IMG/VR virus record: IMGVR_UViG_3300032116_000001
Span: 1-64,000 of that record
DNA: 64,000 bases
Strand: one strand, 5' to 3'
The notes under the pieces are model-generated. The model was not told the origin of the DNA. It made no database searches and worked only from the letters and a program-made list of their open reading frames with translations. How positions within the stretch are numbered: position 1 is the first letter of the stretch; each line of letters starts with the position of its first letter. Position numbers and translations under genes: made by a program. Below, one piece after another: positions 1,525-59,964 of the stretch.

Positions 1525-1932
1525 ATGATCCTGTATCACATTAGCCATCAATACCTCGGGGAAAATCCAACTTTTTCCCCGAAAATCCCCGATCACCCAA
1601 TGCCAGGGGAAAATGAAACCATCCCTCGAATTTGCACGGCTCCAACAATCTCGGGATGTTATCTTGCAATTTTGTCAGATTTCTATCTGCTCGCCAAAGA
1701 AGGACAAGACATCCCCGAATATTTCGTCTATGCAACTGAAACTGACAAAGCTGTTTTCGCAGGGGAAAATGTCCCCGATTCCAACATAACAGGAGAACAC
1801 TGGATTAAGGAGCCAACACAATTTCATCTAATAGGCAAAGCACCTAGAATCAAAATCACAATGAAAAGATATGCCCAGAAACCATTTCTTAACCAACTCA
1901 GAAAAACCGTGGATGAAACGATCACTTTCTAA
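1525..1932 (+). CDS. hypothetical phage protein
   Basis: MILYHIS...ENETIPRICTAPTISGC...VPDSNITGEHW, a motif typical of phage hypothetical proteins. Confidence 0.7.
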   Translation: MILYHISHQYLGENPTFSPKIPDHPMPGENETIPRICTAPTISGCYLAILSDFYLLAKEGQDIPEYFVYATETDKAVFAGENVPDSNITGEHWIKEPTQFHLIGKAPRIKITMKRYAQKPFLNQLRKTVDETITF

Positions 1933-1973
1933 AAAATCCCCCTTTTCATAAACTCTGATCGGATATATAAATC

Positions 1974-2276
1974 ATGCCGAAATTCAAAGTTGATTTCATT
2001 GTTCAGAACTTTCCCGATCCCGACGAGTCCGCATACCTAGCGACAAGAGAAGCTGTTCGCAATCAGCTCAAACATACTAAGGTCAAAACTAGGCAATGGA
2101 ATAGGAGCACTACAACTATTGTCTATACAGAATTTTGTGATGATGCTGTGATCGGATATGAAGACTGGAAAGAAAAGTATCTCGAAAGCCTGATCGAAGA
2201 AGTCAAAGAAAAGGGAGTCGTGATCCGAAGTGTTGAGATCACTGCCACATCTTACGAATACATTATCCAAGACTGA
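1974..2276 (+). CDS. hypothetical protein, paralog of 2594..2902
   Basis: Directly follows the promoter motif; shares DDxVIGYxD...EKYL with 2594..2902. Confidence 0.75.
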   Translation: MPKFKVDFIVQNFPDPDESAYLATREAVRNQLKHTKVKTRQWNRSTTTIVYTEFCDDAVIGYEDWKEKYLESLIEEVKEKGVVIRSVEITATSYEYIIQD

Positions 2277-2283
2277 AAACACT

Positions 2284-2586
2284 ATGCCTAAAACTAACAC
2301 TCAAGAACTGCTTGATCAAATCGTAGAACAGTGCTTTAATCATCTAACCCCAGGTAAAAACATTCATCTTATCTACAGAGAAGGCAACCCAGTTCCATGG
2401 GAATTAAGAATTGATGATTTTGAAAGCTGGACACATTTGAAAAAAGGTATGTCTTTTATGGGAATGATGATGAAGGTAGCGCAAATTCTAGATTGCGAAA
2501 ATGGCGACCAAGAAGTATACAAGACTTATGGATGCCCCACTTGTGGCTGCGGCGACAAAGACATGTATACGCTTAAATTCTGGTGA
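2284..2586 (+). CDS. hypothetical protein with C-terminal CxxC
   Basis: ORF from ATG 2284; CPTCGC motif. Confidence 0.65.
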   Translation: MPKTNTQELLDQIVEQCFNHLTPGKNIHLIYREGNPVPWELRIDDFESWTHLKKGMSFMGMMMKVAQILDCENGDQEVYKTYGCPTCGCGDKDMYTLKFW

Positions 2587-2593
2587 AAACACT

Positions 2594-2902
2594 ATGCCGA
2601 AAATCAAAATTGAACTCCAAATTAAAGACTCGCAAAATCATACTAATCCGCCGCATGTCCTGATTAGAAATGTCTTTCGCGATCATATCAAGCACGCCAA
2701 GATTCAAACAAGAAACTGGAGGGCATATGCTCGATGGGGCTACTACTGGATGATTCTGAAATTCAATGATGATACAGTGATCGGATATGATGATTTTAAC
2801 GAAAAGTATCTCCGCGAAATTTTGGATGAAATCGAACAAAATGGTGTATGTGTCCCGAAGGCGGAAGTCACTGTCAAATCCAAAGAAACGATCACTTTCT
2901 AA
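2594..2902 (+). CDS. hypothetical protein, paralog of 1974..2276
   Basis: Sequence similarity to 1974..2276. Confidence 0.75.
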   Translation: MPKIKIELQIKDSQNHTNPPHVLIRNVFRDHIKHAKIQTRNWRAYARWGYYWMILKFNDDTVIGYDDFNEKYLREILDEIEQNGVCVPKAEVTVKSKETITF

Positions 2903-2943
2903 AAAATCCCCCTTTTCATAAACACTGATCGGATATATAAATC

Positions 2944-3609: not shown

Positions 3610-3649
3610 AAATCCCCCATTTCACAAACCCCAATCGGATATATAAATC

Positions 3650-4614: not shown

Positions 4615-4639
4615 ACAAAAAATCATAGCCATTTGAAGC

Positions 4640-4673
4640 AATCCCCGATCTGAATTATGATCGGGGATTTTTT
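4640..4673 (+). terminator. intrinsic terminator
   Basis: AATCCCCGATC-loop-GATCGGGGATT followed by a T-run. Confidence 0.7.
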
Positions 4674-4785: not shown

Positions 4786-4884
4786 GATCGGGTGCCACGG
4801 CGGGCTTATTTTCTAAAAAAATCCCCTTTTTTCATCTGCTCGATATACTATATAAACTACCTTTAATCAGGAATCCACCAGATA

Positions 4885-6984
4885 ATGATTACTAACCAAA
4901 CTAACAAGCCTGTTGAATCTCTTGGGGTTCAATCTGAAGCATTTTTCAACGTCAAGCAAGAAAACCTCGCGTTTATCTTTGGTATCCTCCGCAATAACCT
5001 TTACTCTGATAAGCCCCTGGCTATTCTGCGAGAGTATTCTGCTAATGCCAAGGATGCTCATGCTGAAAATGGTTGCCCTGAGCGACCGTTTGTCGTCACG
5101 ATGCCCACGGCCTTGTCTCCGAATCTTAGCATCCGAGACTTTGGCAAGGGTCTGAGCGAAGAACAAGTCTATAATATTTTTGCATCGTATGGTGCGTCAA
5201 CCAAGCGCGAAACCAATGACCAGATTGGGGGCTTTGGCATTGGCTCCAAGTCGGCTTTCTGTTATGTTAATGGTTTTACGATTGTTAGCATCTTTGAAGG
5301 CAAGAAGTCTACTTATCGTGCCTACATTGATGAAACCAATATCGGTAAAATCTCTCGAATGGGCGAGCCTACTGACACCGATGAAGAAAGTGGCCTTGAA
5401 ATCATTGTTGAAATCAAGCAAAATGATATTCACTCTTTTGTTGCGGCTGGAAAGTCTCTCTTTAAGCACTTCAATCCCAAGCCGATTATTGTTTCTTGCC
5501 GCGATTTGAGCGAGTATATTGCTAACTATCGTCAGGGTGAAGTCTTGATCGAAGGCTCTGATTGGAGCATTGTGAAGCGTCAAAACTATGGTTCTTCCGA
5601 GGCTTATTGTGTTATGGGAGATATTCGCTATCCCATTCAGATCAACAAGATCACTTCTGATCGTAAGGGCTGGGTTGATTCACTTTATGGTAGCACAATC
5701 AACATTGTCACTCCGATTGGGTCTGTGAAGATGAGCGCAAGCCGTGAATCACTTGAGTATGACGAGGTTACAATTGACTTTCTTAACAAGTCTGTCGAAC
5801 GAATCTATGCCGAAGCCTGCCAAATGGTGACGAATGAACTCAAGAATTGCAAGACTCTTTGGGAAGCGCGAATTTACCTCAAGGAAATGGACAAAATTTA
5901 CGGTAGCCTTAATGTTAAGGCTGAGTGGAATGGCGAACCTATTAAACTACCGCACGTCCATCTTGGGCCGAATGGTTCTGTTGGCGCGATTGAAGGTATT
6001 AGCCTTATTCGACGAGCAGAAAAGACCCGTAACGGGGACCTAAAGTGGTGCCGATGTGCTGATATTGTGCCTTCTAAGAATGTCATTATCTTTACGGACA
6101 ATGGCACGGTGAAGCGAAACACGCTCTTTTCGCGAATTAACAAGTACGTTGCTGACAACAACTTCGGGGGAACCTGCGTGCTTGCTCAATTCACTACGGC
6201 TGAGGCCCAGAAGGAGTTTGAGACTCACGAAGAAATCATCGGCGCGAATATCATTGATGTTGAAACCCTGGCTTATGTGCCTCCGATTCGTGCGAAGCGC
6301 ATTAGCACTGGTGCGCGTGATAAGCAAAAGTGTTCGGCTTTCACTTACAATGGCAAGACCTATGCCAGCGTGAAGTCTCAAGCCTGGGACCCCGTGGAAG
6401 TGGACCTTGTTAATGATGGCGGGGTTTATGTTTACATTGACAAATTCTTGCCAGTCGGTTTTAGTGGCTTTGGACACCTGAAAAAGATCATTGAAGCATT
6501 GGGAGAATTAACTAATGAAACGATCATTGTTCACGGGTTCCGCGCAATGAAGAAAACCGAAAACCTTGGAAGCAATTGGGTTAGCCTTGAGGACAAAATC
6601 AAGAGTGTTATGCAAGATTGGGCCGCTGATGAGCAAACTAGCATGATGGTTGCTTCAAACTACGTCCATGATGAAACGGAAAGAATTTTTGATTATATTC
6701 AAGCGCACCGTGACTTACTTGATGATTCAAGTGTCGCCGCTGAGTTTGTAGACTTTATCAGTGAGTTTCCGACTGTGGTTGATGAAAATGCTCTGGATAA
6801 TCTGAAATACCTGTCTAATTATTCTTGTGATTTTTACAATACGTCTGATGTGGATGAGCATCGGAGTAAGTATAATGAACTCAAGAAAAAGGTCTGGGAA
6901 ACTTATCCTATGCTGATATGCATTGCCCATAAGCATGAAGATCGGCGAGCTTTAGACTACATTGCTCTGGTGGACAAAAAGTAG
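4885..6984 (+). CDS. rIIA: rIIA-like protein (N-terminal GHKL/HATPase domain)
   Basis: NLYSDKPLAILREYSANAKDAH, RDFGKGLS, YGASTKR, GGFGIGSKS; adjacent to an rIIB-like gene. Confidence 0.85.
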   Translation: MITNQTNKPVESLGVQSEAFFNVKQENLAFIFGILRNNLYSDKPLAILREYSANAKDAHAENGCPERPFVVTMPTALSPNLSIRDFGKGLSEEQVYNIFASYGASTKRETNDQIGGFGIGSKSAFCYVNGFTIVSIFEGKKSTYRAYIDETNIGKISRMGEPTDTDEESGLEIIVEIKQNDIHSFVAAGKSLFKHFNPKPIIVSCRDLSEYIANYRQGEVLIEGSDWSIVKRQNYGSSEAYCVMGDIRYPIQINKITSDRKGWVDSLYGSTINIVTPIGSVKMSASRESLEYDEVTIDFLNKSVERIYAEACQMVTNELKNCKTLWEARIYLKEMDKIYGSLNVKAEWNGEPIKLPHVHLGPNGSVGAIEGISLIRRAEKTRNGDLKWCRCADIVPSKNVIIFTDNGTVKRNTLFSRINKYVADNNFGGTCVLAQFTTAEAQKEFETHEEIIGANIIDVETLAYVPPIRAKRISTGARDKQKCSAFTYNGKTYASVKSQAWDPVEVDLVNDGGVYVYIDKFLPVGFSGFGHLKKIIEALGELTNETIIVHGFRAMKKTENLGSNWVSLEDKIKSVMQDWAADEQTSMMVASNYVHDETERIFDYIQAHRDLLDDSSVAAEFVDFISEFPTVVDENALDNLKYLSNYSCDFYNTSDVDEHRSKYNELKKKVWETYPMLICIAHKHEDRRALDYIALVDKK

Positions 6985-7132
6985 TCTAGCATCGGGGAGC
7001 GGGCATAATGCCTGTCTCCCCATTTTTATGACTTTCTGCGATTATGCAGCACGATTAATCTTTTTTTAAAAAAATCCCCTTTTTTCGCAGAGAAACTTGC
7101 TATAATAAAGTATCGGAGACGTAGAATAAGTA

Positions 7133-8386
7133 ATGAAGATCACCGCATGTATTTACCAAACTGGCGATAGCCTCACAATCGCTTTTGACAATGGAAGTCC
7201 GCTGACTATCCATAGTTACGATGGCAATTTTAACAAGGCCGTTGAAGCCTATCGCAATGGGGATGTTGAAGAACTTTATAGTTTGATGAACATCCTCACA
7301 TCTATCGAAAAGATGAGCGAATCTATTGATGACATTAAGGTTGTCGGCAATAGCGTTTATTATCGTGATGAAGAAATCCACAACGTTATTGTTGATCGGA
7401 TTTTGGACTTCCGTAATAATGGCTTTGACATTAAGCCGCTTGCGCGAATGTTGTCCAAGCTGATGCTGAACCCCTCTCGCCGCGCCGTGGAAGAACTCTA
7501 CAAGTTCCTTGCCCACAAGAACCTTCCCGTCACCGATAATGGTAATTTTCTTGCCTATAAGGGCGTGACTTCGGATTATTGGAGCATTACGAGTGGTGAT
7601 GCCAAGCTGATTAAGGGGACGGTTGATGATGGAGGCCGTATCTACAATGGTGTCGGTGAAGAAATCCAAATGCACCGCAATAAGGTGGATGACAATAAGG
7701 ACAATCACTGTTCTTATGGCCTTCATGCTGGTAGCCTTGAATACGCTGATAACTTCCGTAGTTACGGCGGCTACGGCGGAAAGCTGATGATCGTGGAAAT
7801 TGACCCCGCTGATGTAGTGTCGATTCCTAGCGATTGTGGTTGCCAAAAGCTCCGAACTTGCCGCTATAAGGTTGTTGGCGAGTATGACGGACCTCTGACT
7901 CAGCCTCTGTACGAATCTAATTTTTCCACCGAAAATGACGATCTTTATGATGAAGATATTTTTGACGAAGATGATTGCAACGAAGGTGACTACGACTATA
8001 CTGAGCCCGAGGATTTTGACAATGAAGATGATTTAGGTGTCGTCACCGACCAGTGTGGGAATGTTCTTAATGATGGCGATGTTTGTCTGTCTGATGACGG
8101 CAAGTTGTACGCCTGGAATGAAAATAACAAGACGTTTGTTGACCTTGACGATTCTGAAAATGAGCTTGATAGCGCGATGTGGGAGAAGATGACCTATCTC
8201 GACCCCGATGCCCGAAATGATAGTGACTTTTTGGTACTGATTGATGGCATGATCTACGAGGACTCTTTCGGCAATAAACTCAAGTGGAATGAGACGGCTG
8301 ACTTGTTTGAATATGTCAATACAACGTCGTGGCCCAAGCCTACTTATCTTCAGGCAATTCGCAATAAGATTGTTCGCGTTCAGTGA
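7133..8386 (+). CDS. rIIB: rIIB-like protein with acidic C-terminal extension
   Basis: NPSRRAVEELYKFL, GNFLAYKGV, CSYGLHAGSLEYA, VEIDPADVVSIPSD, KLRTCRYKVV. Confidence 0.85.
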   Translation: MKITACIYQTGDSLTIAFDNGSPLTIHSYDGNFNKAVEAYRNGDVEELYSLMNILTSIEKMSESIDDIKVVGNSVYYRDEEIHNVIVDRILDFRNNGFDIKPLARMLSKLMLNPSRRAVEELYKFLAHKNLPVTDNGNFLAYKGVTSDYWSITSGDAKLIKGTVDDGGRIYNGVGEEIQMHRNKVDDNKDNHCSYGLHAGSLEYADNFRSYGGYGGKLMIVEIDPADVVSIPSDCGCQKLRTCRYKVVGEYDGPLTQPLYESNFSTENDDLYDEDIFDEDDCNEGDYDYTEPEDFDNEDDLGVVTDQCGNVLNDGDVCLSDDGKLYAWNENNKTFVDLDDSENELDSAMWEKMTYLDPDARNDSDFLVLIDGMIYEDSFGNKLKWNETADLFEYVNTTSWPKPTYLQAIRNKIVRVQ

Positions 8387-8848: not shown

Positions 8849-8850
8849 CA

Positions 8851-14434: not shown

Positions 14435-14909
14435 GCCTCAGAAACCAAGTGCCCGATTAGGATGGATAGCGCCGAATGGTGATTGGTATCCATGCGCTTA
14501 TACTGCTCATCGACATTTAGCCTCGATCATTGGGCAGAATCTATTCCCAGACACATACTTTCATGACGAACTTCTTTTAGAGCAAAATGGATGGGTTTCT
14601 GTTCGATCTGGTGGCATGATTAGTAATGGCAAAATGATCACGCCCGATCAGATGAATACATTAAGGCTAATCGTGGAAGAATTTGAATACATGGAAAGTG
14701 AAAATCCTAATATAAGTTGGGATGAAGAACTCTGTCGTAATCCAGAACTATATTTTCGCGTCCGCTGTTTCACTATGCCAACAGAAGGCATGAAGGCCAG
14801 CTTTGCCAAAACACTACGATCACGATTTGATTACTTATCGGGGAATGATCATTCCTTGGTTGAAGAATCAAGATTGTCACGAAGAAATAACGTTCATCCA
14901 GGGGATTAA
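14427..14909 (+). CDS. hypothetical phage protein
   Basis: GWIAPNGDWYPC...H...LEQNGWV motif. Confidence 0.7.
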   Translation: MIKPQKPSARLGWIAPNGDWYPCAYTAHRHLASIIGQNLFPDTYFHDELLLEQNGWVSVRSGGMISNGKMITPDQMNTLRLIVEEFEYMESENPNISWDEELCRNPELYFRVRCFTMPTEGMKASFAKTLRSRFDYLSGNDHSLVEESRLSRRNNVHPGD

Positions 14910-14950
14910 AATATCCCCTTTCTTTTTGATTGTGATCGGATATATAAACC

Positions 14951-15310
14951 ATGGACTACAAGATCGAATTAAATGAATATTCTGGAATGCTTGTGGGGAA
15001 TAGATGGTACGAGATTGACATCTTCTATTTAAGCGGCGGATGTTTCGTAGTTGCCATTAACTTTTTGGGATTTTATTCAAAAGGAACAAAATTGTCTCAG
15101 CACGGCAAAAAAGAAGTTGTTAAGAAGGCTTGTGGCTCGGTCAATGATGTGAAAGATTTTGTTTTGGCACATTTTGAAATGGAACAATCCACACATGGTG
15201 GTGATGTTGAATTCACTGGGGCGATGATTGATAATGAAGTCCTGACCAAAAGCAAAATCCTTGGTTTTTCGCGGCGCGAAATTGTTATCCCTTCTGCGAG
15301 CTGCTGTTAA
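14951..15310 (+). CDS. hypothetical protein
   Basis: Promoter motif upstream. Confidence 0.65.
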   Translation: MDYKIELNEYSGMLVGNRWYEIDIFYLSGGCFVVAINFLGFYSKGTKLSQHGKKEVVKKACGSVNDVKDFVLAHFEMEQSTHGGDVEFTGAMIDNEVLTKSKILGFSRREIVIPSASCC

Positions 15311-19747: not shown

Positions 19748-19791
19748 TTAAAAATCCCCTGTTTTTCATGGGGGATTTTGATATATAAGGC

Positions 19792-20193: not shown

Positions 20194-20240
20194 CTAAAAA
20201 ATCCCCTGTTTTTCAATAGGGGATTTGATATATCAATTGT

Positions 20241-20397: not shown

Positions 20398-20698
20398 CGG
20401 GGCGTGGCGAAATGGCAGACGCAGGGGACTTATAAAATGAGCACTTGTTTGTGAAAGCTGCAAGTGAATGCAATCAAATTCGGTGAAACCTTAACAGTTA
20501 GGCTGATGGCAATACCGAGCCAAGCTAACTCAAAACAGAGTTAGAAGGTGTAGAGACTAGATGGTTGCTGCCTAAGTCGAAAGATATGGCAAAGGTATAG
20601 TCCAGACCACAAAATCCTTTGGGATCGTAGTGAAAGCTATAGTGGTATGAAAATCCCTTAGTAGCAATACTGTGTGGGTTCGAGTCCCACCGCCCCGA
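20398..20698 (+). tRNA. tRNA-Leu (TAA) interrupted by a group I intron
   Basis: Exons 20398-20431 and 20650-20698; joining them restores GGGGA-CTT^AAAA-TCCCT. Confidence 0.92.
20432..20649 (+). mobile_element. group I intron (tRNA-Leu UAA type, IC3-like), 218 nt, no ORF
   Basis: Inserted after the U of the anticodon, ends in G; P AAATTCGGTGAAA, Q AATACCGAGC, R GTAGAGACTAGATGG, S AAGGTATAGTCC. Confidence 0.9.
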
Positions 20699-24613: not shown

Positions 24614-24725
24614 TTTTTCGCACATATGTGTCAGGGGTTCGAATCCCCTCTCCTGCTTTGAGTTGAGTGATGATATCCGATCATAAAAAATCCCCCTTTT
24701 TCTCAATAGTGATCGGATATATAAA

Positions 24726-25325
24726 GTATTGCTGTGAGCTAAATCAATTGACACAGCATGATGAAACCAAAATCATCTAAAAACAATAAGGTGCTCCATA
24801 TACGTCTGGGAAAGATAAATTAGACGTGGACACACTGTGATGTGGACTAATCACAGCGCACTGGGGCATGTGTGCAAGCCCGAAAAGCCTATCTTTACTG
24901 ATATAGTTAAAGAGAAAGAGCAGAGAGTTAAGGCTTAAAATAAACTCCATGCGTTCGTAAGGATGAACTCAAAGACGAGTTCAGTTATGACTAGGATACG
25001 AGAGGAGGGAGGCAATGAGTTTCTCTCCTCTCCCCGACAAAGCGATTTCCGACTGCTCATCGGAGAAGTGATCTAGTAAAACACTCAGAAAAACACTAGC
25101 GTAGGAAATGCGTTAATCCCTGATTTTTTATCGGTTTTTAGAGACAAAAAACTGTTCGTATAGGGCTTGCGGTAAGCCTCTTGTTTTAGCTAGGTGATCC
25201 TGTATGTAAAAACCAAGCGGATGGAACAAATCAATTTGTTTTCGCGAGCAAATGATCCATTGACTTTGGGGAACAGCGTAAGAACGTTTCGCCATGAGGC
25301 TTTGAGCAAAGTCTCGTTCCCCAAA
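24726..25325 (+). ncRNA. large structured ncRNA (~600 nt), ROOL/GOLLD-like
   Basis: No + strand ORF of 60 aa or more, own promoter, many helices, located between tRNAs. Confidence 0.65.
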
Positions 25326-25339
25326 AATAAAAAGATTCT

Positions 25340-26291: not shown

Positions 26292-26488
26292 TAATTGATT
26301 TTCCAACGAAGCACCTTGGCAAGAGCTTTTTCTAACAGTTTTGGCTCCATGCCAAGAAGGACACGTGCCCTGAAACCACGTGTTAATGCTGAAAATATGG
26401 GGACAATCGGGAGAGACCGATAAAAAATCCCTCTTTTTTGGGGAATGAAATTCATATAAGAAATGTGAAGTGAAAGAAAAGTAAAAAG

Positions 26489-26634
26489 TTCGCCCGAATT
26501 AAATATCGGAACAATCCTTTCCTGAAGAGGTTTAGCACTAATTAGGATTAAAGACACTTGGAGTGGGAACTCTGTTTGAAAGAAGTAACATATACCCCGC
26601 AATGGTAACAGACCTACCACCGAGGCGAAAAATT
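26489..26634 (+). ncRNA. putative structured ncRNA, copy A (related to 50739..50906)
   Basis: Identical 22-nt and 19-nt end blocks shared with 50739..50906; the ends pair (TTCGCC/GGCGAA). Confidence 0.55.
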
Positions 26635-26801
26635 GCTAGATAAATGGAAATCTAGCTCAACGAGCACAGACACCTTGTAGCTAAAAGCGTCGCATGTGAG
26701 AGCCATTGCGGAAGTGGTGTGACAATCGGGAGAGACCGATAAAAAATCCCCTTTTTTCGAGGGATAAAACAATATAAAAGATATCAGTGCAGTGCGGAGT
26801 G

Positions 26802-26934
26802 ATAGCTACACGAAGCACCTGGAAAAGCTAACCAGAGACACTGTGATGCTACGGTGGTGTATAGAGCACAGCAGAACGAATTGACCTCGGTCATGCAGGG
26901 ACGCAGGAGGCGACTTCGCTCGCCCCGTAGCTAT
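26802..26934 (+). ncRNA. putative structured ncRNA upstream of the tRNA-Ser pair
   Basis: Closing helix ATAGCTAC/GTAGCTAT; internal hairpins; motif shared with 24806-24857. Confidence 0.5.
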
Positions 26935-26942
26935 AATTTTTC

Positions 26943-27030
26943 GGAGAGTAAACCAGTCAAGGATTGGGGCATCCTGGAAAGATGATCGGATGTGCGAACA
27001 TCTACGGGGCAGGTCCGTTGCTCTCCTCCA
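26943..27030 (+). tRNA. tRNA-Ser (GGA), atypical T-loop
   Basis: GGAGAGT/GCTCTCC-TCCA; CATC-CTGGAAA-GATG; long variable arm. Confidence 0.75.
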
Positions 27031-27047
27031 TTTTCATTCAAAAGAAC

Positions 27048-27133
27048 GGAACGTAATCCCGACAGGTGCTGGGCGATGTTTGCTAAACAATCGGCTTTGT
27101 AAAAGAAGTGGGGTTCGAGTCCTCTGCGTTCCT
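27048..27133 (+). tRNA. tRNA-Ser (GCT)
   Basis: GGAACGT/GCGTTCC; anticodon loop TTGCTAA; GGTTCGAGTCC; no encoded CCA. Confidence 0.75.
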
Positions 27134-27178
27134 AAAAAAATCCCCCTTTCTTTTTGTTCCTGGAGTGATATATAAAAC

Positions 27179-27379
27179 ATGAAAGATTTTGAAGACGTGG
27201 TTTTTGGAAGTTCCGATGAATGGAATGGGGCAGCTGGTATTGTGCCTGAGGACAAGTTTTACGTTTCTTATCCCGATTGTTCCATTCAGATTTGCGACAC
27301 CGAAGGAGAGTGTGCGGCAATTCAAAGAGAATTCCGTGTTATGCACCGCCGAAACCCGATCACTGGCGAAGCAACTTAA
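27179..27379 (+). CDS. hypothetical protein
   Basis: Promoter motif upstream. Confidence 0.7.
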   Translation: MKDFEDVVFGSSDEWNGAAGIVPEDKFYVSYPDCSIQICDTEGECAAIQREFRVMHRRNPITGEAT

Positions 27380-27419
27380 AAATCCCCTTTCTTTCGTGGC
27401 CTAATCGGATATATAAGAT

Positions 27420-31083: not shown

Positions 31084-31159
31084 GCCCCAGTAGCTCAGTG
31101 GATAGAGCAGCGGCCTTCTAAGCCGTTTGTCGGAGGTTCGAGTCCTCTCTGGGGCACCA
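31084..31159 (+). tRNA. tRNA-Arg (TCT)
   Basis: Canonical cloverleaf, CCA. Confidence 0.97.
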
Positions 31160-31202
31160 AATTTTCCCCTTATTTCAAAACACTTTTATACTATATCAAA
31201 GT

Positions 31203-31953: not shown

Positions 31954-32163
31954 ATGAACGATTCAAATCGCTTTGAAGTAATCAGCTCAGGTCCATACAA
32001 TTTGAAGATTGTTGCGCAAACTATGACTGAGTGCATGGATATGATTCGACGAAACTCTGACATGGTGGACTTCTGGGCAGTTTTAGACCATTCTACGAAA
32101 ACCGTGGTCGCTTTAAGCCAGGACTGGAAAGTCTTGCCAACATTCAAACCCGCAGTAAACTAA
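31954..32163 (+). CDS. hypothetical protein
   Basis: Promoter motif upstream. Confidence 0.6.
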   Translation: MNDSNRFEVISSGPYNLKIVAQTMTECMDMIRRNSDMVDFWAVLDHSTKTVVALSQDWKVLPTFKPAVN

Positions 32164-34506: not shown

Positions 34507-34682
34507 ACTGACTTAACACAATCGGCTATAGGCGGAAGTGATTTTATCACTTCCGCTTTTCTTTTATGAACACGATTTTTTATGACTTTATATCATGATC
34601 TTTTTTATGACTTTCTATGATCGGGTGGCACGATTATAATAAAAATCCCCTTTCTTTTGTGGTCCAATCGGATATATAAATT

Positions 34683-35264
34683 GTGATTAATATCAGTAAT
34701 TTCCGCGGTCCTATCGTCCAAATCGAACTTCGCCAGGGGAGTCTTTTGGAAGCAAAAGACTTAGACATCATTGTTAATGCTGCGAACTGTAAGATGCGCG
34801 GTGGCGGAGGATTAGACGGCGCGGTTCATGATGCTGCAGGCCCTAACCTTCTTGAAAAGCTGAAAGAACTTGCCCCCTACGGCAGCCCGACTTCCCATCC
34901 CGTTGTTACAGATGGCTTTGAAACTGGATTTAAGAAAATCATTCACACTCCTGGTCCTGTGTGGGCTGATGGTGTTTCAGGCGAGCGCATTGCACTTCGG
35001 GCAACATATGATTATGCTCTTGATGCCGCTAATGCGATCTGCAAAAACAAGAATTATAAATCAGTGGGGTTTGGTTCTATTAGCACAGGAATCTTTGGAT
35101 TTCCTCTTGACCTTGCAATGCCCATCGCTCTTGGTGCCGTATCTGAATGGGTGCGGGTTGCGCAAAATGTTTATTTCAACAAAATTGTCTTTGTGATGTA
35201 CGGGGAAGAAGAATACAACAAGTATAAAACAGCTTTTGACGCTATTAAAGCGTGGAACCCGTAA
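34683..35264 (+). CDS. macrodomain ADP-ribose hydrolase (MacroD/YmdB-like)
   Basis: IVNAAN..MRGGGGLDGAVHDAAG, IIHTPGP, ISTGIFGFP. Confidence 0.92.
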   Translation: MINISNFRGPIVQIELRQGSLLEAKDLDIIVNAANCKMRGGGGLDGAVHDAAGPNLLEKLKELAPYGSPTSHPVVTDGFETGFKKIIHTPGPVWADGVSGERIALRATYDYALDAANAICKNKNYKSVGFGSISTGIFGFPLDLAMPIALGAVSEWVRVAQNVYFNKIVFVMYGEEEYNKYKTAFDAIKAWNP

Positions 35265-36658: not shown

Positions 36659-36989
36659 AAATCCCCTTTCTATCGTTGCAGAAAATAATATAAAACCGAG
36701 GATACACATTTTGATTTCAAAGCAACAAGCACTTGATTATAATACGAAAGAGTCTTTATTGATGCGTTACATTGATTCAAAGATTCTTCTCTATCGCGGT
36801 CGTATATTAGAGTTTTCGGTTGAGGGTCATTCTCAAGAATTGCTTGATAAGTTGATGCCATTGTATCAAGAAAATGGGTGGGATATCAAGCAAATTAATC
36901 GAAAAAAGACAGGTGGACACAGCAAACATCGGTATTGGCGCGTAAAATAATCCCCCATTTTCCATAGCCGAAAATAATATAAAAAGAAC

Positions 36990-37065
36990 GGGTCAGTAGC
37001 TCAGCAGGTAGAGCAGCGGTCTTTTAAACCGCGGGTCGTGGGTTCGAGTCCCACCTGGCCCACCA
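36990..37065 (+). tRNA. tRNA-Lys (TTT)
   Basis: Canonical cloverleaf, CCA. Confidence 0.97.
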
Positions 37066-40308: not shown

Positions 40309-40351
40309 TAAAATTCCCCTTTGTTTTTGAATCCAATCGGATATATAAGAA

Positions 40352-48300: not shown

Positions 48301-48394
48301 TGCGACACTATATCATTTTTATGACTTTCTACGATTGTGTGGCACGATCATAAAAAATCCCCCTAATAAAGCTGAGTAATCGGATATATAATGT

Positions 48395-48474
48395 GGGGCA
48401 AATAGCTCAGTAAAGACATATGGGAATGTAACAGTAGAGGTTTCCGCGTATGTTCAAATCCTGTTGCTCCACCA
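48395..48474 (+). ncRNA. tRNA-Ala-like mini RNA lacking an anticodon arm
   Basis: GGGGCAA/TTGCTCC-ACCA with G3:U70; own promoter. Confidence 0.55.
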
Positions 48475-48515
48475 AAAATCCCCTATATTTTCCGCGTTCA
48501 TGCCATATATAAACT

Positions 48516-49723: not shown

Positions 49724-50599
49724 TTAGGCCGTCGCCAGTTCTTTCTTTGCTTCCAGGCTCTTGGCCTTGCCTCGGCCCATAATGAAGTTTGCGGCTTTCC
49801 CCGCAAGTCCTGCGGCCTGCACGACCATTTTGGGGTCGTCATTCAGAACCTTGAGCCAGCCCTGAATATAGGCCTGGGTGTTCTCGGTGTCATTGTCGAT
49901 GCCGATTTCTTGGCAGAGAAAGGCGGCTGTGAGTTCTGCTACCAGTTCCTCGCGGCTGTAACCTTCCTTGTCAAGCGTTGAGATTTGCATGACTTCGGGT
50001 CGAGCCAATCGGGATTCGTGGCCCGTCGCGTGACCAAGTTCATGGAATAAGGTCGCGTAATAGGCTTCGGAACTGACAAAAGATTCGATAATAGGCATTT
50101 GGACCCAATCGCCATAAGGCGAATAACAGGCACGATTTCCACCGTGACGAATCTCAGGCACCAGCGGCATTTCTTGGACCACTTCCTCACAACGTTCGAT
50201 GCGGCGATTGTCTTTCAGTTCCTCAATCGGCGGCAGGTCGAGCCCTTCGGTTTGCTCCACATTGAAAACATAAAATTGCTTCAATACGGGGTAGGAACCT
50301 GTCTTGCCAGTCTTATCATCCTCATAACTCACCTGCTTCCAGAACACAATCGGTGTGCCCTTCTCGCCCTTCTTGATTCGCCCGCCCATCTTGTTGATTT
50401 GATTGCAAGTCATCCAGCGCGGGTCGGCAAAGGTAGACATTGACAAAAGCAGAAGGTTGAGCCCGCTATACTTGGTTCCGCTACTGGGGTTGCAGGGTCG
50501 AATCACCGACCAGGGTCGCTTCCAAGCAACGTTTCCGCTCTTTAGGCCCTCGATGATGGTGTTGGTTACGATTTCGTAGACTTCGGACTTCTTCTTCAT
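49724..50599 (-). CDS. ardC: ArdC-like antirestriction protein (ssDNA-binding + zincin-like)
   Basis: WKRPW, YSGLN, IKKGEKG, VFNVEQ, YYATLFHELGHATGH, YSREELVAEL, AYIQGW. Confidence 0.92.
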   Translation of the reverse strand: MKKKSEVYEIVTNTIIEGLKSGNVAWKRPWSVIRPCNPSSGTKYSGLNLLLLSMSTFADPRWMTCNQINKMGGRIKKGEKGTPIVFWKQVSYEDDKTGKTGSYPVLKQFYVFNVEQTEGLDLPPIEELKDNRRIERCEEVVQEMPLVPEIRHGGNRACYSPYGDWVQMPIIESFVSSEAYYATLFHELGHATGHESRLARPEVMQISTLDKEGYSREELVAELTAAFLCQEIGIDNDTENTQAYIQGWLKVLNDDPKMVVQAAGLAGKAANFIMGRGKAKSLEAKKELATA

Positions 50600-50906: not shown

Positions 50907-50960
50907 ACTTGACAATCGGAAAAATCCCCCTTTTCCACTAACACAATCGGATATATAAGC

Positions 50961-51064
50961 AGGTGTCCAGGGGGCGGTGAAAGTCCGCAAGGCGGCTGCA
51001 GAGTCATGAATCTGCAGTGCGGCTGGTTTCCTCTGCGCTTGCGCAAGACCACCCTGGCGAGCCT
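50961..51064 (+). ncRNA. GC-rich structured RNA / 5' leader
   Basis: CCAGGG/CCCTGG, GCGG/CCGC, CTGCAGA/TCTGCAG and TGCGC/GCGCA helices directly after a promoter. Confidence 0.5.
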
Positions 51065-51079
51065 TCACAAGAGAGAAAT

Positions 51080-51292
51080 ATGCACGAGTTTGGTATAACT
51101 TTCCAAAACATCCATGGCGAAACATATGACAGCCCCGAATATGTTGGTCTTACGCTGCCGTTTCGCCCAAATGTTGGTGATGAAATCCTGATTGTGGGGG
51201 CAGGAGGAAAATCCTACAGAGTCTTGAAAGTTGAATATTGCGCTGGGCCATCGTTTGGTGACTTTCTTCTCACCGTCGAACCCGTGGTGTAA
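51080..51292 (+). CDS. hypothetical protein
   Basis: LPFRPNVGDEI. Confidence 0.6.
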   Translation: MHEFGITFQNIHGETYDSPEYVGLTLPFRPNVGDEILIVGAGGKSYRVLKVEYCAGPSFGDFLLTVEPVV

Positions 51293-52972: not shown

Positions 52973-53646
52973 CCTTTATATATCCGATTAGAACAAGAAA
53001 AACAAGGGATTTTTATGACTTTCTACAATCATGTGCCACACCCAAAGAACACACCAAAATCTCGGATGGAGCGAACACACTTTTGTGCGCCGCTCAAGCC
53101 GAGAAACATACAGAAAACAGAAAATGCCAGAATACTTAGATGCTACATGGTTTTGTTCTCCTCGATGGTGTTTCGCATATTGATTTGATTTTCCTTCGAG
53201 TTTAGAGCTGTTGCCAACTCTTCTTTATATATCCGATTAGAGCCATGCAAAAAGGGGATTTTTTATATAATGATCGTATCACATAATCTCGGAAAGTCAT
53301 AAAGAAAGGCCCCATTTTAGGGGCCTTGTTTTCTTAGACGCTAGTCGTCATAATCGTCATTCCGACGTTCTTTTCCTCGGCGGCGAGACCAATTTAGGTC
53401 CTCACGAGCATGCTTCCCCGCCTTTTCTTTCTTTCTCTTGTTTTTGATGTCTTTGGGCACTAGCCCCCAGTGTTTTTCTGGCCAATCCGAGTTTCGGTTG
53501 GGATTCATCATTACCCTCCTTTTTATATATCCGATTGAAACCATTCAAAAAGGGGATTTTTATAATGATCGTGGCGCATAATCGCAGAAAGTTATAAAGA
53601 AAGGGGCATTAGCCCCTAGTCTTTACTTATGCCCCAGAAGGCAACT

Positions 53647-54870: not shown

Positions 54871-55275
54871 GATTGTTTTCCTCTCCTTATATATCAGATT
54901 GGGCTACGAAAGAAAGAGGATTTTTTATGACTTTCTGCGATTGTGTGACACAATTCAATGCAAGCCAAATATAAACAAAATCCCTGGCCACGGAGCCTCA
55001 TGCTCATGCGCGACCAGGGTGCCGTCAGTTTTTGGATAATCTCTATACTGTTTGCAACCAATATAGAACCACGTAATCGCGTCCTGAGACTGACCGTTGC
55101 ATTTTCACGCTCTGCAACTAGAGGGGAAGCGGATACTCTTTGGTGTGCAGTCCACTTCTCAGCACTAGCGAGGTTGAGGCCTCGTTCTTCTTATATATCC
55201 GATTAGGCCAATGTAAAAAGGGGATTGTTTATAAAAAAACCCCCGCATTTTCAAACACAATCGGATATATAAAAT

Positions 55276-56676: not shown

Positions 56677-57152
56677 ATTTTCATATATCCGATTAGAACA
56701 CGAAAAACAAGGGTTTTTTTATAATGATCGTGTCACACAATCGTAGAAAGCCATAAAGAAAAAGACCCGTCCATCCATGACGGGCCTTTCTTCCTCTTCT
56801 TTTTGTACTTGTATTTTTTTATTCTGGATTTTTGATAGAGTGTGACTTGGGAAACCCAAACAAGATACAAATGAAAATGGTTAATTACTCCATCCTCATA
56901 ATCTCTTGCATCTGATATACGCCCATCGTATACTTCGACACCGCTAAGTTTCAAGACAACGCGCCCGCCTTGCAAGGGACTCGAACCCAAGCTTCGATGT
57001 TAAACGTTTCTCAGATTGTGAAACTTAATTCACTATCACACTCTTCTTTATATATCCGATTAGAGCCATGCAAAAAGGGGATTTTTTAATGATCGTGGCG
57101 CACAATCGTAGAAAGTCATAAAAAAGACGGATGCTCATATTGAGCATCCAAT

Positions 57153-57571: not shown

Positions 57572-57923
57572 ATCTTATATATCCGATTAGACCACGAAAG
57601 AAAGGGGATTTTTAATCAACGGCGTAAACAGAAAAGTTTAGCCCCAACAAATAATTGTTGGGGCTAACGACATGCCTATCTTGTCTTGGTTTTTGAGTTT
57701 TCAGTTACACTTTCTTTCTCATGCTGGTAAGGTTCGTCCAGCTACTATAAGGGCTACAGGGCCTGGTCATCGAGCACAATCTGAGTCTCGCGCTTTCCTC
57801 AGTCTTGTTACTTTATATATCCGATTAGAGCCATGCAAAAAGGGGATTTTTTAATGATCGTGCCACATGATCACGGAAAGTCATAAAGAAAGACAGATAA
57901 CTTGTATCTGCCTTTCCAAGTTT

Positions 57924-58328
57924 TCAATCCCCGATGGAGTAGTATTGTTTGAACACCACTACTTGAATGTTCGCCATTATGCAGTGAACAGAAATGTCCC
58001 CGCCCTGCCATGCATTGCCAATGTCATAAAGAACATTTGCAAGTTCGGAGTTTTCAAGCCCAGCCGTGGTGAAGAGATTGTATCTGACCGCACTGTAAGA
58101 CGCATTGCCCCAGGCCTCTTCAACATTTTGGATTCGATTGAACGCATTGTCGCTTGAAATGTCAATCCAAAGCCGCTCTCCATTTGACAAATCGGCGATA
58201 TAGTATTCTCCCCGATTGGTTACAACCTTGCGAATGGCATGATTCAGAAAGTGTTCGCCCGACCGCGTGGGAAGGATTTTTTCAGGCTGAGTAGGATACT
58301 CGGCTGTGATTGTGGGGACTTTGATCAT
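57924..58328 (-). CDS. hypothetical protein
   Basis: Reverse promoter motif. Confidence 0.65.
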   Translation of the reverse strand: MIKVPTITAEYPTQPEKILPTRSGEHFLNHAIRKVVTNRGEYYIADLSNGERLWIDISSDNAFNRIQNVEEAWGNASYSAVRYNLFTTAGLENSELANVLYDIGNAWQGGDISVHCIMANIQVVVFKQYYSIGD

Positions 58329-58470
58329 CTTGACTTTCCACCTAGTTTATATATCCGATTAGAATACAAAAGACAAGGGATTTTTTTAATGATCGTGCCA
58401 CATAAAAACAGAAAGCCATAAAAAATCCCCTTTCTGCATGGCTCCAATCGAATATATAAAGAGAGGAACA

Positions 58471-58953
58471 ATGACTACTGAACAAGTCGCCGCCGCCCTC
58501 GCCACCAAGCGCAAGGGAACAATATTCACCCTTCGCGTTGCACGTCCCGCCAAACTTCGCGCTGGTTCGCGAGATATGGATATTGTCAAGGCTTCCGTTA
58601 TGCAAGGCATGGCGAACACTGACTATGCCAGCCGTGGCCCCGTTCGCGAAGCCGTGGCCCTGGGAGAACGTGATGCCCCTGCCCTGCCCAAGCATATTGA
58701 AAAGACATTCACGGAAAACGACGTGAAGTTTTGGAAAGGCCACAATGGCGAAATCTACTTGCCCGTTTGCCTTACGGGGAATCATGCCGAAGTCACCTGG
58801 CTTCAGGATGGCGAGGAAGTCAGCCTGGACGAAATCAAGGACCATCTGCTTGCTTCCGAATATGCAAGCCGCACCGATAAGGATGACCTTGCAGAACGCG
58901 GCCAAGTGCCCTTTATCGGCGTAAATGTCAAGCACATCGAATCGGTAAACTAA
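58471..58953 (+). CDS. hypothetical phage protein
   Basis: Promoter plus GAGG SD; terminator at 58970-58993. Confidence 0.75.
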   Translation: MTTEQVAAALATKRKGTIFTLRVARPAKLRAGSRDMDIVKASVMQGMANTDYASRGPVREAVALGERDAPALPKHIEKTFTENDVKFWKGHNGEIYLPVCLTGNHAEVTWLQDGEEVSLDEIKDHLLASEYASRTDKDDLAERGQVPFIGVNVKHIESVN

Positions 58954-59068
58954 GCCAGACCATAAAGACTAGGGGCGCAAGCCCCTTTCTTTATAACTTT
59001 CTATGATTGTGTGCCACGATCATTATAAAAATCCCCTTTCTTTTGTGTTCTAATCGGATATATAAAAC

Positions 59069-59176
59069 ATGAACAAAGGATTTACGCTCCCAGAACTTGT
59101 TTTCCTCATGCTTGGAGTTATTATCTTTGTCATCTTGACCCTTGCTGCTATTTACATCGGGATGCGAGTCTTTTGA
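59069..59176 (+). CDS. 35-aa type IV prepilin-like peptide
   Basis: MNKG|FTLPELVFLMLGVIIFVILTLAAIYIGMRVF directly after the promoter motif. Confidence 0.7.
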   Translation: MNKGFTLPELVFLMLGVIIFVILTLAAIYIGMRVF

Positions 59177-59502
59177 TGCCAGAAGTTATCAATGCAGAAA
59201 AATGGCTAAAGGCACCCAATAGACAGGGTAAATGGCTTTGCCTGACCGTGGGCTTCCAAAATTACGACCCACAAACAATCCGAGATTACGATGTCAATAA
59301 TGAACGTGATGGCGCAAGGGTGGTCAAAGCCGATTTCATCTACGTCCATTGGGCATATGACCAAAAGACCAAATCAAAGATTTTGCTCCAGGTGTATGCA
59401 CCGTTCACTTCCCGATGCCCGTCTATGCCACTGCCCGAAGATACCGATGCGGTAAAGTATTTCTATATCGGGCCTTTTGAACTTCCTTTTGACCAGCGAT
59501 AA
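59173..59502 (+). CDS. hypothetical protein
   Basis: Overlaps the stop of the pilin-like ORF (ATG at 59176 also possible). Confidence 0.6.
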   Translation: MMPEVINAEKWLKAPNRQGKWLCLTVGFQNYDPQTIRDYDVNNERDGARVVKADFIYVHWAYDQKTKSKILLQVYAPFTSRCPSMPLPEDTDAVKYFYIGPFELPFDQR

Positions 59503-59964
59503 AAATCCCCTGTATTTTCAAACACAATCGGATATATAAGATATGCAGAACGTAGAAGGAACAAACACCTGGGTGGGCGAGACTGTGCCAATGCAGTTCG
59601 GACGCATGGCTGATGAATGTGGCGAACCGATTGACCATACCGCTGTCACTATCGTTGTCCCCGATTGCCTTGAACACAAAAATGTTCGCATCACCATTGA
59701 AGTCATTGAATGATGGGCAGGCAGTGACCACAATAAAAATCCCCCGTTTCTTATAAGGCAAAACCATATATAAGAGGAGGGGGCAAAAACCCCTACCCAC
59801 ATCCGACCACCAAGACCCTGTACCACGATCAACAACGATGATGATTATGATCGGGCACCCATGTGTCATGATCGCTGCTATAGTAGAGGGGGGGGTACTA
59901 AAACTTTTAGGTACCATAAGGAAGCGGTACGCCACCCCGTCATTTTTTCGATCATGCCAAAAAA

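What the first reader, a model, noticed from the sequence alone, without database searches (positions are those of the whole stretch)
1931..59773. Genome region built from ~90 promoter-gene cassettes with leaderless mRNAs
Almost every gene has its own copy of AAAAATCCCC...ATCGGATATATAA, with ATG/GTG only 3-6 nt downstream and no Shine-Dalgarno (e.g. 1974, 2944, 14951, 27420, 36003, 40352). The motif often overlaps the previous stop codon. It is not a standard sigma70 -35/-10 pair, which suggests a phage-encoded RNA polymerase or sigma factor, or an unusual host. Leaderless initiation could keep these genes translated when canonical initiation is impaired. The repeats could also shuffle cassettes, as proposed for PeSL elements of T4-like phages.
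Basis: partly seen in the sequence, partly recalled or inferred. Interest (0 to 1): 0.7.

Follow-up and report, generated by a model that had tools for sequence, protein, structure and literature searches.

The report
Leaderless early-promoter cassettes of a jumbo phage
The first 60 kb of an uncultivated 379-kb freshwater phage carries about 90 copies of one unusual 39-base promoter, most of them set so close to a start codon that the messages can have almost no leader; this is a new variant of the promoter cassettes known from T4-like phages.

Summary
A position matrix finds 88 copies in the window (99 in the 378,848-bp phage genome; best score on shuffled sequence 9.6 bits against a 12-bit cut-off).

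**The element.** It is bipartite with fixed spacing: (T)AAAAATCCCC, 22 nt, TATA(T/A)NA. In 49 copies the second block is the full ATCGGATATATAA.
- An ATG or GTG that opens a real ORF lies exactly 3 nt after the 13-mer in 45 copies, and 3-7 nt after it in 60.
- In the 3-nt copies the motif's own TAA is an in-frame stop one codon before the start.
- 13 copies have longer leaders with a Shine-Dalgarno sequence.
- At least four copies precede RNA genes or RNA-like stretches.
- Back-to-back divergent pairs leave no room for another promoter.

I therefore read it as a promoter, not a translation signal. The 5' UTR is inferred to be 0-4 nt. No start site has been mapped.

**What reads it.** It is not a TTGACA/TATAAT pair. 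No phage RNA polymerase was found, and three phage sigma genes lie elsewhere in the genome. Whether a host or a phage sigma reads the motif is unresolved; I favour the host enzyme. The host is unknown.

**Cassette shuffling.** Evidence is suggestive only. Promoter modules are shared between unrelated genes. The one strain-level cassette replacement involves a TnpB insertion element.

**Verdict.** New variant of a known kind; interest moderate to high.

The parts
1931..59773 (.). Array of 88 promoter copies. They lie on the + strand from 1.9 to 50 kb and mostly on the - strand from 50.6 to 58.4 kb. The full coordinate list is in notebook entry 5.
1931..1970 (+). Class A copy (full ATCGGATATATAA). 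The TAA of the upstream ORF is the start of the A-tract. The ATG at 1974 opens a 100-aa ORF.
2901..2940 (+). Class A copy, 98% identical over 62 nt to the copy at 1931. ATG at 2944, 221 aa.
14908..14947 (+). Class A copy. Here the C-run is the 3' arm of an upstream GGGGAT...ATCCCC hairpin. ATG at 14951.
27377..27416 (+). Class A copy, among the best scoring (51.4 bits). ATG at 27420.
34640..34679 (+). Class A copy followed after 3 nt by the GTG at 34683. The ORF is a Macro-domain protein whose N-terminal strand needs this start.
40309..40348 (+). Class A copy with the GTG start at 40352. No alternative in-frame start occurs in the first 60 codons.
31159..31198 (+). Weak class B copy (14.8 bits), ATG 4 nt after the 13-mer at 31203. 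The DUF3841 profile aligns from residue 3, which supports this start.
4816..4855 (+). Class B copy with a 29-nt leader before rIIA (4885-6984).
7068..7107 (+). Class B copy (core TGCTATAAT) with a 25-nt leader before rIIB (7133-8386).
53523..53562 (-). Class A copy followed by an AAAGGAGGG leader and an ATG 11 nt after the 13-mer. It shows that the motif is separable from the start codon.
57575..57614 (-). Class A copy (51.4 bits) with an ATG 3 nt downstream. It belongs to the 13-copy spacer family TTTCTTTCGTGGTCTA.
36945..36984 (+). Class B copy directly before tRNA-Lys (36990-37065). The tRNA begins 5 nt after the 13-mer.
48352..48391 (+). Class A copy before a tRNA-like RNA (48395-48475). 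That RNA starts at motif position 16 and ends in CCA. ARAGORN and Rfam do not call it.
20196..20235 (+). Hairpin-type copy with no ORF. About 170 nt downstream lies tRNA-Leu(UAA) (20399-20697), split by a group I intron.
24685..24724 (+). Consensus class A copy followed by about 600 nt without an ORF (24728-25339), then tRNA-Asp.
19749..19788 (+). One of 6 copies in which AAAAATCCCC pairs with a downstream GGGGATTTT (-14 kcal/mol). This is a terminator hairpin laid inside the promoter.
55191..55272 (.). Back-to-back divergent pair (13-mers at 55203 on - and 55260 on +). The 82 nt are filled by the two motifs, leaving no room for another promoter.
48324..48351 (+). Upstream box ACTTTCTACGATTGTGTGGCACGATCAT. 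It is one of 24 copies, all in the window, and 17 of them abut the A-tract of a promoter copy.
50919..50958 (+). Class A copy before a 120-nt G+C-rich leader (50962-51079) and a 70-aa ORF (51080-51292).
59734..59773 (+). Last copy of the array (class B). No ORF follows within 60 nt.

Best explanation
The repeat is the class-specific, most likely early, promoter of a 379-kb jumbo phage.

**The element.** Each unit is a bipartite DNA signal of fixed geometry. An A5-6 tract plus TCCCC is followed 22 nt later by a TATA(T/A)NA core, often extended to ATCGGATATATAA. RNA polymerase starts at or just before position 16, which is a purine in 91% of copies.

**The messages.** In 60 of 88 copies that position is, or lies within 4 nt of, the A or G of the start codon. 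Most messages of this region therefore have a 0-4-nt leader and no Shine-Dalgarno sequence. They must be translated in the leaderless mode, in which the ribosome recognises the 5' start codon.

**The cassettes.** The preceding gene often ends in the TAA that begins the A-tract. A whole intergenic space of about 40 nt is then promoter. Units are gene-sized cassettes, many closed by their own terminator.

**The enzyme.** It is the host core polymerase, because no phage polymerase is encoded. I think the host primary sigma is the more likely specificity factor (about 55%), with the upstream block acting as an UP-like or activator-type contact. This step is inferred.

**A side effect.** About 100 near-identical 40-bp repeats give homology for gain, loss and exchange of cassettes.

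**Shown and inferred.** Shown: the repeat, its geometry, its restriction to one region, and its separability from coding starts. Inferred: the start site, the leaderless translation, the temporal class and the sigma factor.
For: **Enrichment and geometry**
- Enrichment is strong.
- The two conserved blocks carry 38-47 bits and the spacer is poorly conserved.
- ATG or GTG sits at position 16 in 48 of 88 copies against 3.5% background. 45 of these open ORFs of at least 35 codons.
- In the 3-nt copies an in-frame TAA inside the motif forbids an upstream start.
- A purine is at position 16 in 80 of 88 copies and a pyrimidine at 15 in 60 of 88. Among the 40 copies without a start codon there, 32 still have a purine.

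**It is a transcription signal, not a translation signal**
- 13 copies have 11-29-nt leaders with a Shine-Dalgarno sequence.
- Copies precede tRNA-Lys, a tRNA-like RNA, the intron-split tRNA-Leu and a 600-nt non-coding stretch.
- Four divergent pairs have no space for another promoter.

**The starts are real**
- The Macro domain needs the GTG at 34683. DUF3841 aligns from residue 3.

**Class restriction and early-type content**
- 88 of 99 copies lie in the first 60 kb.
- That region holds small ORFans, rIIA and rIIB, an ArdC-like protein, PARP-like and Macro proteins, and 15 or more tRNAs.

**Polymerase and purifying selection**
- No phage polymerase was found.
- In a 95%-identical strain, all 10 differences around the copy at 3634 fall outside the two blocks.
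Against: - No transcript 5' ends are available. No RNA run was listed.
- With the hexamer placed at TATA(T/A)N, a canonical sigma-70 enzyme would start 2 nt further downstream, inside the ATG. In bacterial leaderless genes the first T of TANNNT lies about 12 nt before the start codon (PMC3160421). Here it is 10 nt.
- The position that should be T(-7) is mostly A.
- The upstream block resembles no known -35 element and lies 5 bp too far upstream for one.
- Nothing shows that the region is transcribed early.
- Several large ORFs remain unannotated, so an unrecognised polymerase is not excluded.
Confidence: 0.7

Rival explanations
1. The promoter function and leaderless output are the same, but the motif is read by a phage-specified factor. 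That factor could be one of the three phage sigma factors, possibly delivered with the virion, or a phage activator bound to AAAAATCCCC. The phage would then own an orthogonal promoter class, and the region might be a middle class rather than immediate early.
For: - The information content of 38-47 bits is far above that of ordinary host promoters and is typical of phage-specific promoters.
- There is no TTGACA-like -35. The upstream block sits at an activator-like position.
- Three sigma-70-family genes are present. One is SigH-like, and one has weak SigK, SigF and SigG matches.
- From my own knowledge, the class B core CATATAANA resembles the CATA---TA -10 element of the Bacillus sigma-K type.
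- No other conserved promoter class was found in the remaining 315 kb.
Against: - The sigma genes sit in the replication module and at 303 kb. None has a recognisable host-type promoter of its own, and none has this motif.
- If the motif needed a phage sigma, no abundant host-readable promoter class would remain for the first minutes of infection.
- The weak variants grade into TGnTATAAT-like sequences, which are typical of primary sigma factors.
- The attempt to model sigma with promoter DNA was not folded, so it gives no evidence either way.
Confidence: 0.3
2. The motif is an RNA-level signal on long polycistronic transcripts. It would be a cleavage site that trims messages to leaderless form, or an A/U-rich translation enhancer, and not a promoter.
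For: The fixed 3-nt distance to the start codon would also fit a processing or ribosome-loading signal. The block AUAUAUAA is A/U-rich.
Against: - The divergent pairs at 47.7, 50.6, 55.2 and 58.4 kb have no upstream promoter that could supply a precursor.
- The motif precedes tRNA and other non-coding RNA genes.
- Leaders with a Shine-Dalgarno sequence follow 13 copies.
- Terminator-like hairpins are three times enriched between cassettes, 49 against 16 expected.
- The motif has no conserved RNA structure. Only 6 of 88 copies fold below -6 kcal/mol.
Confidence: 0.05
3. The repeat is mainly a selfish or recombinational DNA element, such as a miniature mobile repeat or an insertion-element target, and its position before genes is incidental.
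For: Whole modules including the unconstrained spacer recur before unrelated genes: 33 pairs against 0.5 expected. A TnpB insertion element sits between two copies in one strain.
Against: - The orientation always matches the downstream gene.
- The start codon is in register in 45-60 copies.
- The element has no terminal inverted repeats or target duplications.
- The two blocks are conserved while the spacer is free.
Confidence: 0.03

Closest known systems
PeSL (promoter-early stem-loop) cassettes of T4-type phages (Arbiol et al. 2010, PMC2839356; Comeau et al. 2014, PMC4122927)
   Same: - Many copies of a strongly conserved early-type promoter with an A/T-rich upstream tract.
- They are concentrated in regions of small ORFans.
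- They are combined with terminators so that each gene is an insulated cassette.
- G/C runs sit inside the element.
- They are proposed to drive modular shuffling.
   Different: - There is no TTGACA-like -35 at 17 bp.
- There is no Shine-Dalgarno sequence. In most copies the start codon follows the -10 region by 3 nt.
- The stem-loop is part of the element in only 6 of 88 copies.
- The phage is not T4-like. It has a DnaE-type replicase and a distant terminase.
- Recombination or mini-circles are not shown.
T4 early promoters (about 40 copies, extended consensus with an A-tract near -42; from my own knowledge of Miller et al. 2003)
   Same: A phage early class that is much better conserved than host promoters. 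It has an A-tract upstream of the -35 position and is read by unmodified or ADP-ribosylated host polymerase.
   Different: T4 keeps a recognisable -35 (GTTTAC) at the canonical spacing and uses normal leaders.
Leaderless genes of Actinobacteria and Deinococcus-Thermus, where the -10 box lies next to the ORF (PMC3160421, PMC12340547)
   Same: A TA-rich -10 box lies immediately before the start codon. There is no Shine-Dalgarno sequence. GTG as well as ATG starts are used.
   Different: - In those bacteria the first T of TANNNT lies about 12 nt before the start. Here it is 10 nt.
- The final T of the hexamer is usually A here.
- A second, 10-nt conserved block is obligatory here.
Thermus phage phiYS40 (as summarised in PMC3594737)
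   Same: A large phage that produces most messages of one temporal class without leaders. This is the precedent for a phage biasing translation towards leaderless mRNA.
   Different: In phiYS40 the leaderless class is middle/late and the host phylum is itself rich in leaderless genes. Here the leaderless class is the putative early ORFan region, and the promoter is a long bipartite repeat.
Early promoters of the jumbo phages phiKZ and AR9 (PMC8244752, PMC5312081)
   Same: A conserved A/T-rich early promoter repeated tens of times in a jumbo phage.
   Different: Those are read by a virion multisubunit polymerase that this genome lacks. phiKZ has no leaderless transcripts, and AR9 leaders are 26-491 nt.

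Membership tests
PeSL cassettes of T4-type phages | Strong sigma-70-like promoter: -35 and -10 hexamers about 17 bp apart | tested here: not met
   The TTGACA-N16-18-TATAAT scan finds 32 sites against 29.1 expected. The conserved upstream block is TCCCC, 22 nt from the TATA core.
PeSL cassettes of T4-type phages | A/T-rich tract upstream of the -35 position | tested here: met
   The A5-6 tract is present in nearly all copies.
PeSL cassettes of T4-type phages | Stem-loop terminator as part of the element | tested here: inconclusive
   The AAAAATCCCC...GGGGATTTT hairpin occurs in 6 of 88 copies. The C-run is the 3' arm of an upstream hairpin in about 8. Separate terminator-like hairpins are enriched, 49 against 16.4 expected.
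PeSL cassettes of T4-type phages | Shine-Dalgarno sequence and start codon at the 3' end of the element | tested here: not met
   60 of 88 copies have the start codon 3-7 nt after the -10 block with no Shine-Dalgarno sequence. Only 13 have a leader with one.
PeSL cassettes of T4-type phages | Concentrated in plastic regions of small non-essential ORFans | tested here: met
   88 of 99 copies lie in the first 60 kb. Median ORF length there is 112-130 aa against 200-330 aa elsewhere. There are few paralogues and few family matches.
PeSL cassettes of T4-type phages | Recombination between copies causes insertions, deletions and mini-circles | tested here: inconclusive
   One replacement between strains has one junction inside a -10 box and the other at the first base of the next copy, but the inserted DNA is a TnpB element. 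Spacer families are shared between unrelated genes. Reads gave no usable joints.
Bacterial leaderless genes (-10 box adjacent to the ORF) | TANNNT-type box with its first T about 12 nt before the start codon | tested here: inconclusive
   The TATA core starts 10 nt before the start codon in 45 copies. The sixth position is mostly A, and T in only some class B copies.
Bacterial leaderless genes (-10 box adjacent to the ORF) | The primary 5' end coincides with the start codon | not testable with these tools
   No RNA run was listed.
Promoters of phage-encoded RNA polymerases (T7-like, N4-like, phiKZ-like) | The genome encodes the matching polymerase | tested here: not met
   No PF00940 match, although that search's control genomes did not ring either. 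No PF00623 match. No NADFDGD motif in six frames. No polymerase family among the 28 largest ORFs scanned. Unannotated ORFs remain.
Phage sigma-dependent promoter classes (for example SPO1 gp28 and gp34, T4 gp55) | The phage encodes a sigma factor that recognises the motif | not testable with these tools
   Three sigma genes are present. Recognition could not be tested, because the job was not folded.

The most novel reading that the evidence does not exclude
The phage runs its whole host-takeover programme on a private expression channel. About 100 copies of a promoter would be read only through a phage-specified factor (a virion-delivered sigma or an activator binding AAAAATCCCC). Their messages would be leaderless and therefore independent of Shine-Dalgarno-based initiation, which the phage could then suppress. 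That would be a natural, compact, orthogonal transcription-translation module of about 40 bp.
Probability: 0.2. Interest if true: 0.8.

Novelty: new variant of a known kind. Interest (0 to 1): 0.6.

Why it matters
- It would be the first jumbo phage whose early programme is mainly leaderless. The jumbo phages with mapped start sites, phiKZ and AR9, have none (PMC8244752, PMC5312081).
- The 39-bp unit packs the stop codon, the promoter and the start codon into one intergenic space. This is an extreme of regulatory compaction and a ready-made part for synthetic biology.
- The invariant bipartite motif gives a clean handle for finding what recognises it. The GTG-initiated leaderless ORFs constrain what the unknown, apparently widespread freshwater host must be able to translate.
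- The roughly 100 repeats make cassette exchange directly testable in natural populations, because the phage occurs nearly unchanged in at least 20 public freshwater data sets.

Tried and rejected
**Start-site evidence**
- No RNA run was listed.
- The two raw-read DNA runs had no reads on the stretch. Contig runs simply break at the repeats, and their 'joints' have sides of 20-45 letters, so they are repeat artefacts.

**Relatives**
- The motif occurs in no other IMG/VR contig.
- The only rIIA relative (L004, 38% identity) and Rhodobacter phage RcXuper use ordinary TTGACA-type promoters or Shine-Dalgarno leaders.
- A 77%-identical sigma lies on a 46-kb fragment without the early region.

**Host**
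- UDP-glucose dehydrogenase is only 25% identical to anything found.
- There is no NblA, psbA, hli or WhiB.
- The polymerase, terminase and rIIA have only 27-35% relatives, spread over many host phyla.
- The intron-split tRNA-Leu looked like a cyanobacterial clue. Similar segments occur in Agrobacterium phage Atu_ph07 and in a 735-kb uncultured phage, so I dropped it.

**Other promoter classes**
- k-mer searches upstream of genes outside the window found nothing comparable.
- TGnTAnAAT is not enriched in intergenic DNA.

**Phage polymerase**
- The searches are listed in the membership test. A 674-aa ORF with a DYDGD string shows no polymerase signal.

**Other**
- The sigma-DNA modelling job was not folded.
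- The 28-nt upstream box is not a conserved mini-ORF, because stops interrupt it. It shows no compensatory pairing.


Full report
**What the window is.**
- The window is the first 64 kb of a single 378,848-bp contig. It is an IMG/VR virus record of 40.6% G+C that CheckV rates complete.
- The genome encodes rIIA and rIIB, a DnaE-type polymerase, a clamp loader, ribonucleotide reductase, a large terminase, giant virion proteins and three sigma-70-family proteins.
- It has no close cultured relative.
- The same sequence occurs almost unchanged in at least 20 public freshwater and 'fungus' metagenome runs from 2017 to 2025.
- The host is unknown.

**The observation.**
- The 13-mer ATCGGATATATAA with up to 2 mismatches occurs 50 times against 1.85 expected.
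- A 42-nt matrix built from these copies and iterated finds 99 copies in the genome, 88 of them in the window. A shuffled genome peaks at 9.6 bits against the 12-bit cut-off.
- The general form is (T)AAAAATCCCC(T), a T-rich and otherwise free spacer, then ATATA(T/A)NA. The distance is invariant.
- 49 copies carry the full ATCGGATATATAA (class A). 39 carry only the core, often as AATCATATAANA or TTTGATATATAA (class B).

**Relation to genes.** I count the first base of the 13-mer as position 0.
- An ATG or GTG occupies positions 16-18 in 48 of 88 copies against a 3.5% background. 45 of these open ORFs of 35-228 codons.
- 60 copies have a start codon 3-7 nt after the 13-mer (53 ATG, 7 GTG). 13 have leaders of 11-29 nt with GAGG or GGAG. 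Five have longer leaders without a clear Shine-Dalgarno sequence. Ten have no ORF.
- In the 3-nt class the TAA at positions 10-12 is in frame with the start codon, so the ORF cannot begin further upstream.
- Two starts are backed by domain boundaries. The Macro-domain protein at 34683 needs its GTG, and DUF3841 at 31203 aligns from residue 3.
- In 38 copies the upstream ORF stops in or next to the A-tract. In 25 the stop is the TAA of TAAAAATCCCC, so the whole gap of about 40 nt is the motif.
- By a crude ORF count, about two thirds to three quarters of the genes have their own copy. The others lie in short operons.

**Why it is a promoter.**
- The motif is separable from coding starts. It precedes leaders with a Shine-Dalgarno sequence, tRNA-Lys (which begins at position 18), a tRNA-like RNA that begins at position 16, a 170-nt leader before an intron-split tRNA-Leu, and a 600-nt non-coding stretch.
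- Four back-to-back divergent pairs are filled completely by two motifs, so nothing else could start transcription there.
- Terminator-like hairpins between cassettes are three times enriched.
- Position 16 is a purine in 80 of 88 copies, including 32 of the 40 copies without a start codon there. Position 15 is a pyrimidine in 60. That is the usual pattern at a start site.
- The -10-like core ends 4 nt before the start codon, so a transcript that contains the codon can carry at most about 4 nt of leader. This is an inference from geometry. No 5' ends are available.

**What reads it.**
- Canonical sigma-70 pairs are not enriched.
- The upstream block lies 22 nt from the TATA core, about 5 bp beyond a -35 position. 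That is where UP elements or class II activators sit.
- The base that should be T(-7) is mostly A.
- The TATA core starts 10 nt before the start codon. In known leaderless bacteria the figure is about 12 nt (PMC3160421).
- No T7-like, multisubunit or other polymerase was found among the families and the 28 largest ORFs scanned. Several large ORFs remain unannotated.
- Three phage sigma genes lie at 109.4, 112.5 and 302.7 kb, without this motif.
- I favour host holoenzyme, for three reasons. This is the only abundant promoter class. It fronts a typical host-takeover region. Its weak variants grade into TGnTATAAT-like sequences.
- A phage-specified factor remains a serious rival at about 0.3.

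**Class restriction.**
- 88 of 99 copies lie in the first 60 kb.
- A sibling contig (L055) continues 8 kb beyond the left end of this contig. That stretch has ten more copies, all with a start codon 3-4 nt away, and no other similarity to the genome.
- The array therefore exceeds 97 copies, and the record is probably truncated on the left.
- No comparably conserved motif exists in the other 315 kb.

**Extra anatomy.**
- Only 6 copies form the AAAAATCCCC...GGGGATTTT hairpin. About 8 use the C-run as the 3' arm of an upstream hairpin.
- A second conserved element, a 28-nt box with an imperfect palindrome GATTGTG-N3-CACGATC, occurs 24 times and only in this region. It always follows a T-run, and 17 times it lies directly before the A-tract. 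It looks like a protein-binding site. Its role is unknown.

**Shuffling.**
- The genes behind the copies are almost all unrelated to each other.
- Yet 33 pairs of copies share at least 14 of 16 spacer bases against 0.5 expected, while their flanks are at random identity. Promoter modules have therefore been copied between genes, or the spacer is under a subclass-specific constraint.
- Between two related strains (L055 and L060), a 0.28-kb cassette is replaced by 1.34 kb. The left junction is inside a -10 box, and the right junction is at the first base of the next motif.
- The 1.34 kb is an IS200/IS605-type TnpB element with hairpin ends. It is 76% identical to a copy at 144.3-145.5 kb of this genome. 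Transposition plus deletion may explain the event, so I count it as cassette-level plasticity and not as proof of PeSL-type recombination.
- In a 95%-identical strain, the ten differences around the copy at 3634 all avoid the two conserved blocks.

**Comparison with what is known.**
- The nearest described system is the PeSL cassette of T4-type phages (PMC2839356, PMC4122927). It shares the A-tract, the ORFan regions, the insulation by terminators and the proposed shuffling.
- This element fails two defining PeSL features, the sigma-70 -35/-10 pair and the Shine-Dalgarno sequence. It also belongs to an unrelated phage.
- Leaderless output has precedents in Thermus phage phiYS40 (PMC3594737) and in Actinobacteria and Deinococcus-Thermus (PMC3160421, PMC12340547).
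- The jumbo phages with mapped start sites have no leaderless messages (PMC8244752, PMC5312081).
- A literature search found no description of this architecture.

**Verdict.** This is a real, highly non-random, class-specific promoter repeat that almost certainly yields leaderless messages. It is a new variant of a known kind. The polymerase or sigma question and the shuffling mechanism remain open.

Noticed in passing
window 20399-20697: tRNA-Leu(UAA) split by a group I intron (Rfam 58.2 bits) between U34 and A35. ARAGORN does not call it. Similar segments occur in Agrobacterium phage Atu_ph07 and in a 735-kb uncultured phage.
   Followed up: partly
window 48395-48475: tRNA-like RNA with a 7-bp acceptor stem, a TTCAAAT loop and an encoded CCA. 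It starts at the predicted transcription start. ARAGORN and Rfam do not recognise it, and its minimum-energy fold is not a cloverleaf.
   Followed up: partly
window 24728-25339: About 600 nt without an ORF, directly behind a consensus promoter and before tRNA-Asp. No Rfam match. It may be a large non-coding RNA.
   Followed up: no
window 7031-58996 (24 sites, e.g. 48324-48351 and 57089-57116): Conserved 28-nt box with an imperfect palindrome. It is confined to the promoter array, always follows a T-run and usually abuts the promoter A-tract. It may be an operator for a regulator.
   Followed up: partly
window 32163-33443 and 34683-35264; G000 142971-144182: An ADP-ribosylation set: a WGR-PARP_reg-PARP protein and a Macro-domain protein in the early region, and an ART-PolyVal protein elsewhere in the genome.
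   Followed up: no
window 49724-50599 (-): ArdC-like anti-restriction protein (ArdcN plus a zincin peptidase domain) behind a class A promoter with a 14-nt Shine-Dalgarno leader.
   Followed up: no
G000 144287-145456; L060 101-1360 (-): Two diverged copies (76% nt identity) of an IS200/IS605-type TnpB element with hairpin ends in this phage lineage. In one strain a copy sits between two promoter copies.
   Followed up: partly
L055 1-8034, left of window position 1: A sibling contig carries 8 kb more of promoter cassettes beyond the left end of this record. Window 1-1260 differs from that contig by about 6%, and the rest is identical. The record is probably not complete despite the 100% estimate.
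   Followed up: partly
window 50962-51079: G+C-rich 120-nt leader between a class A promoter and a 70-aa ORF. No Rfam match, and its folding energy is not unusual (z = -1.0).
   Followed up: partly
window 26449-27140: Two promoter copies followed by non-coding sequence and a sub-threshold tRNA-Sec-like match (27047-27133; 35.6 bits against a cut-off of 47).
   Followed up: no
G000 114897-118121 and 219827-222913: The large terminase ORF (1074 aa) is interrupted between its two halves. A UvsW-like helicase ORF has an intein-splicing match below the family cut-off. Inteins are possible in both.
   Followed up: no
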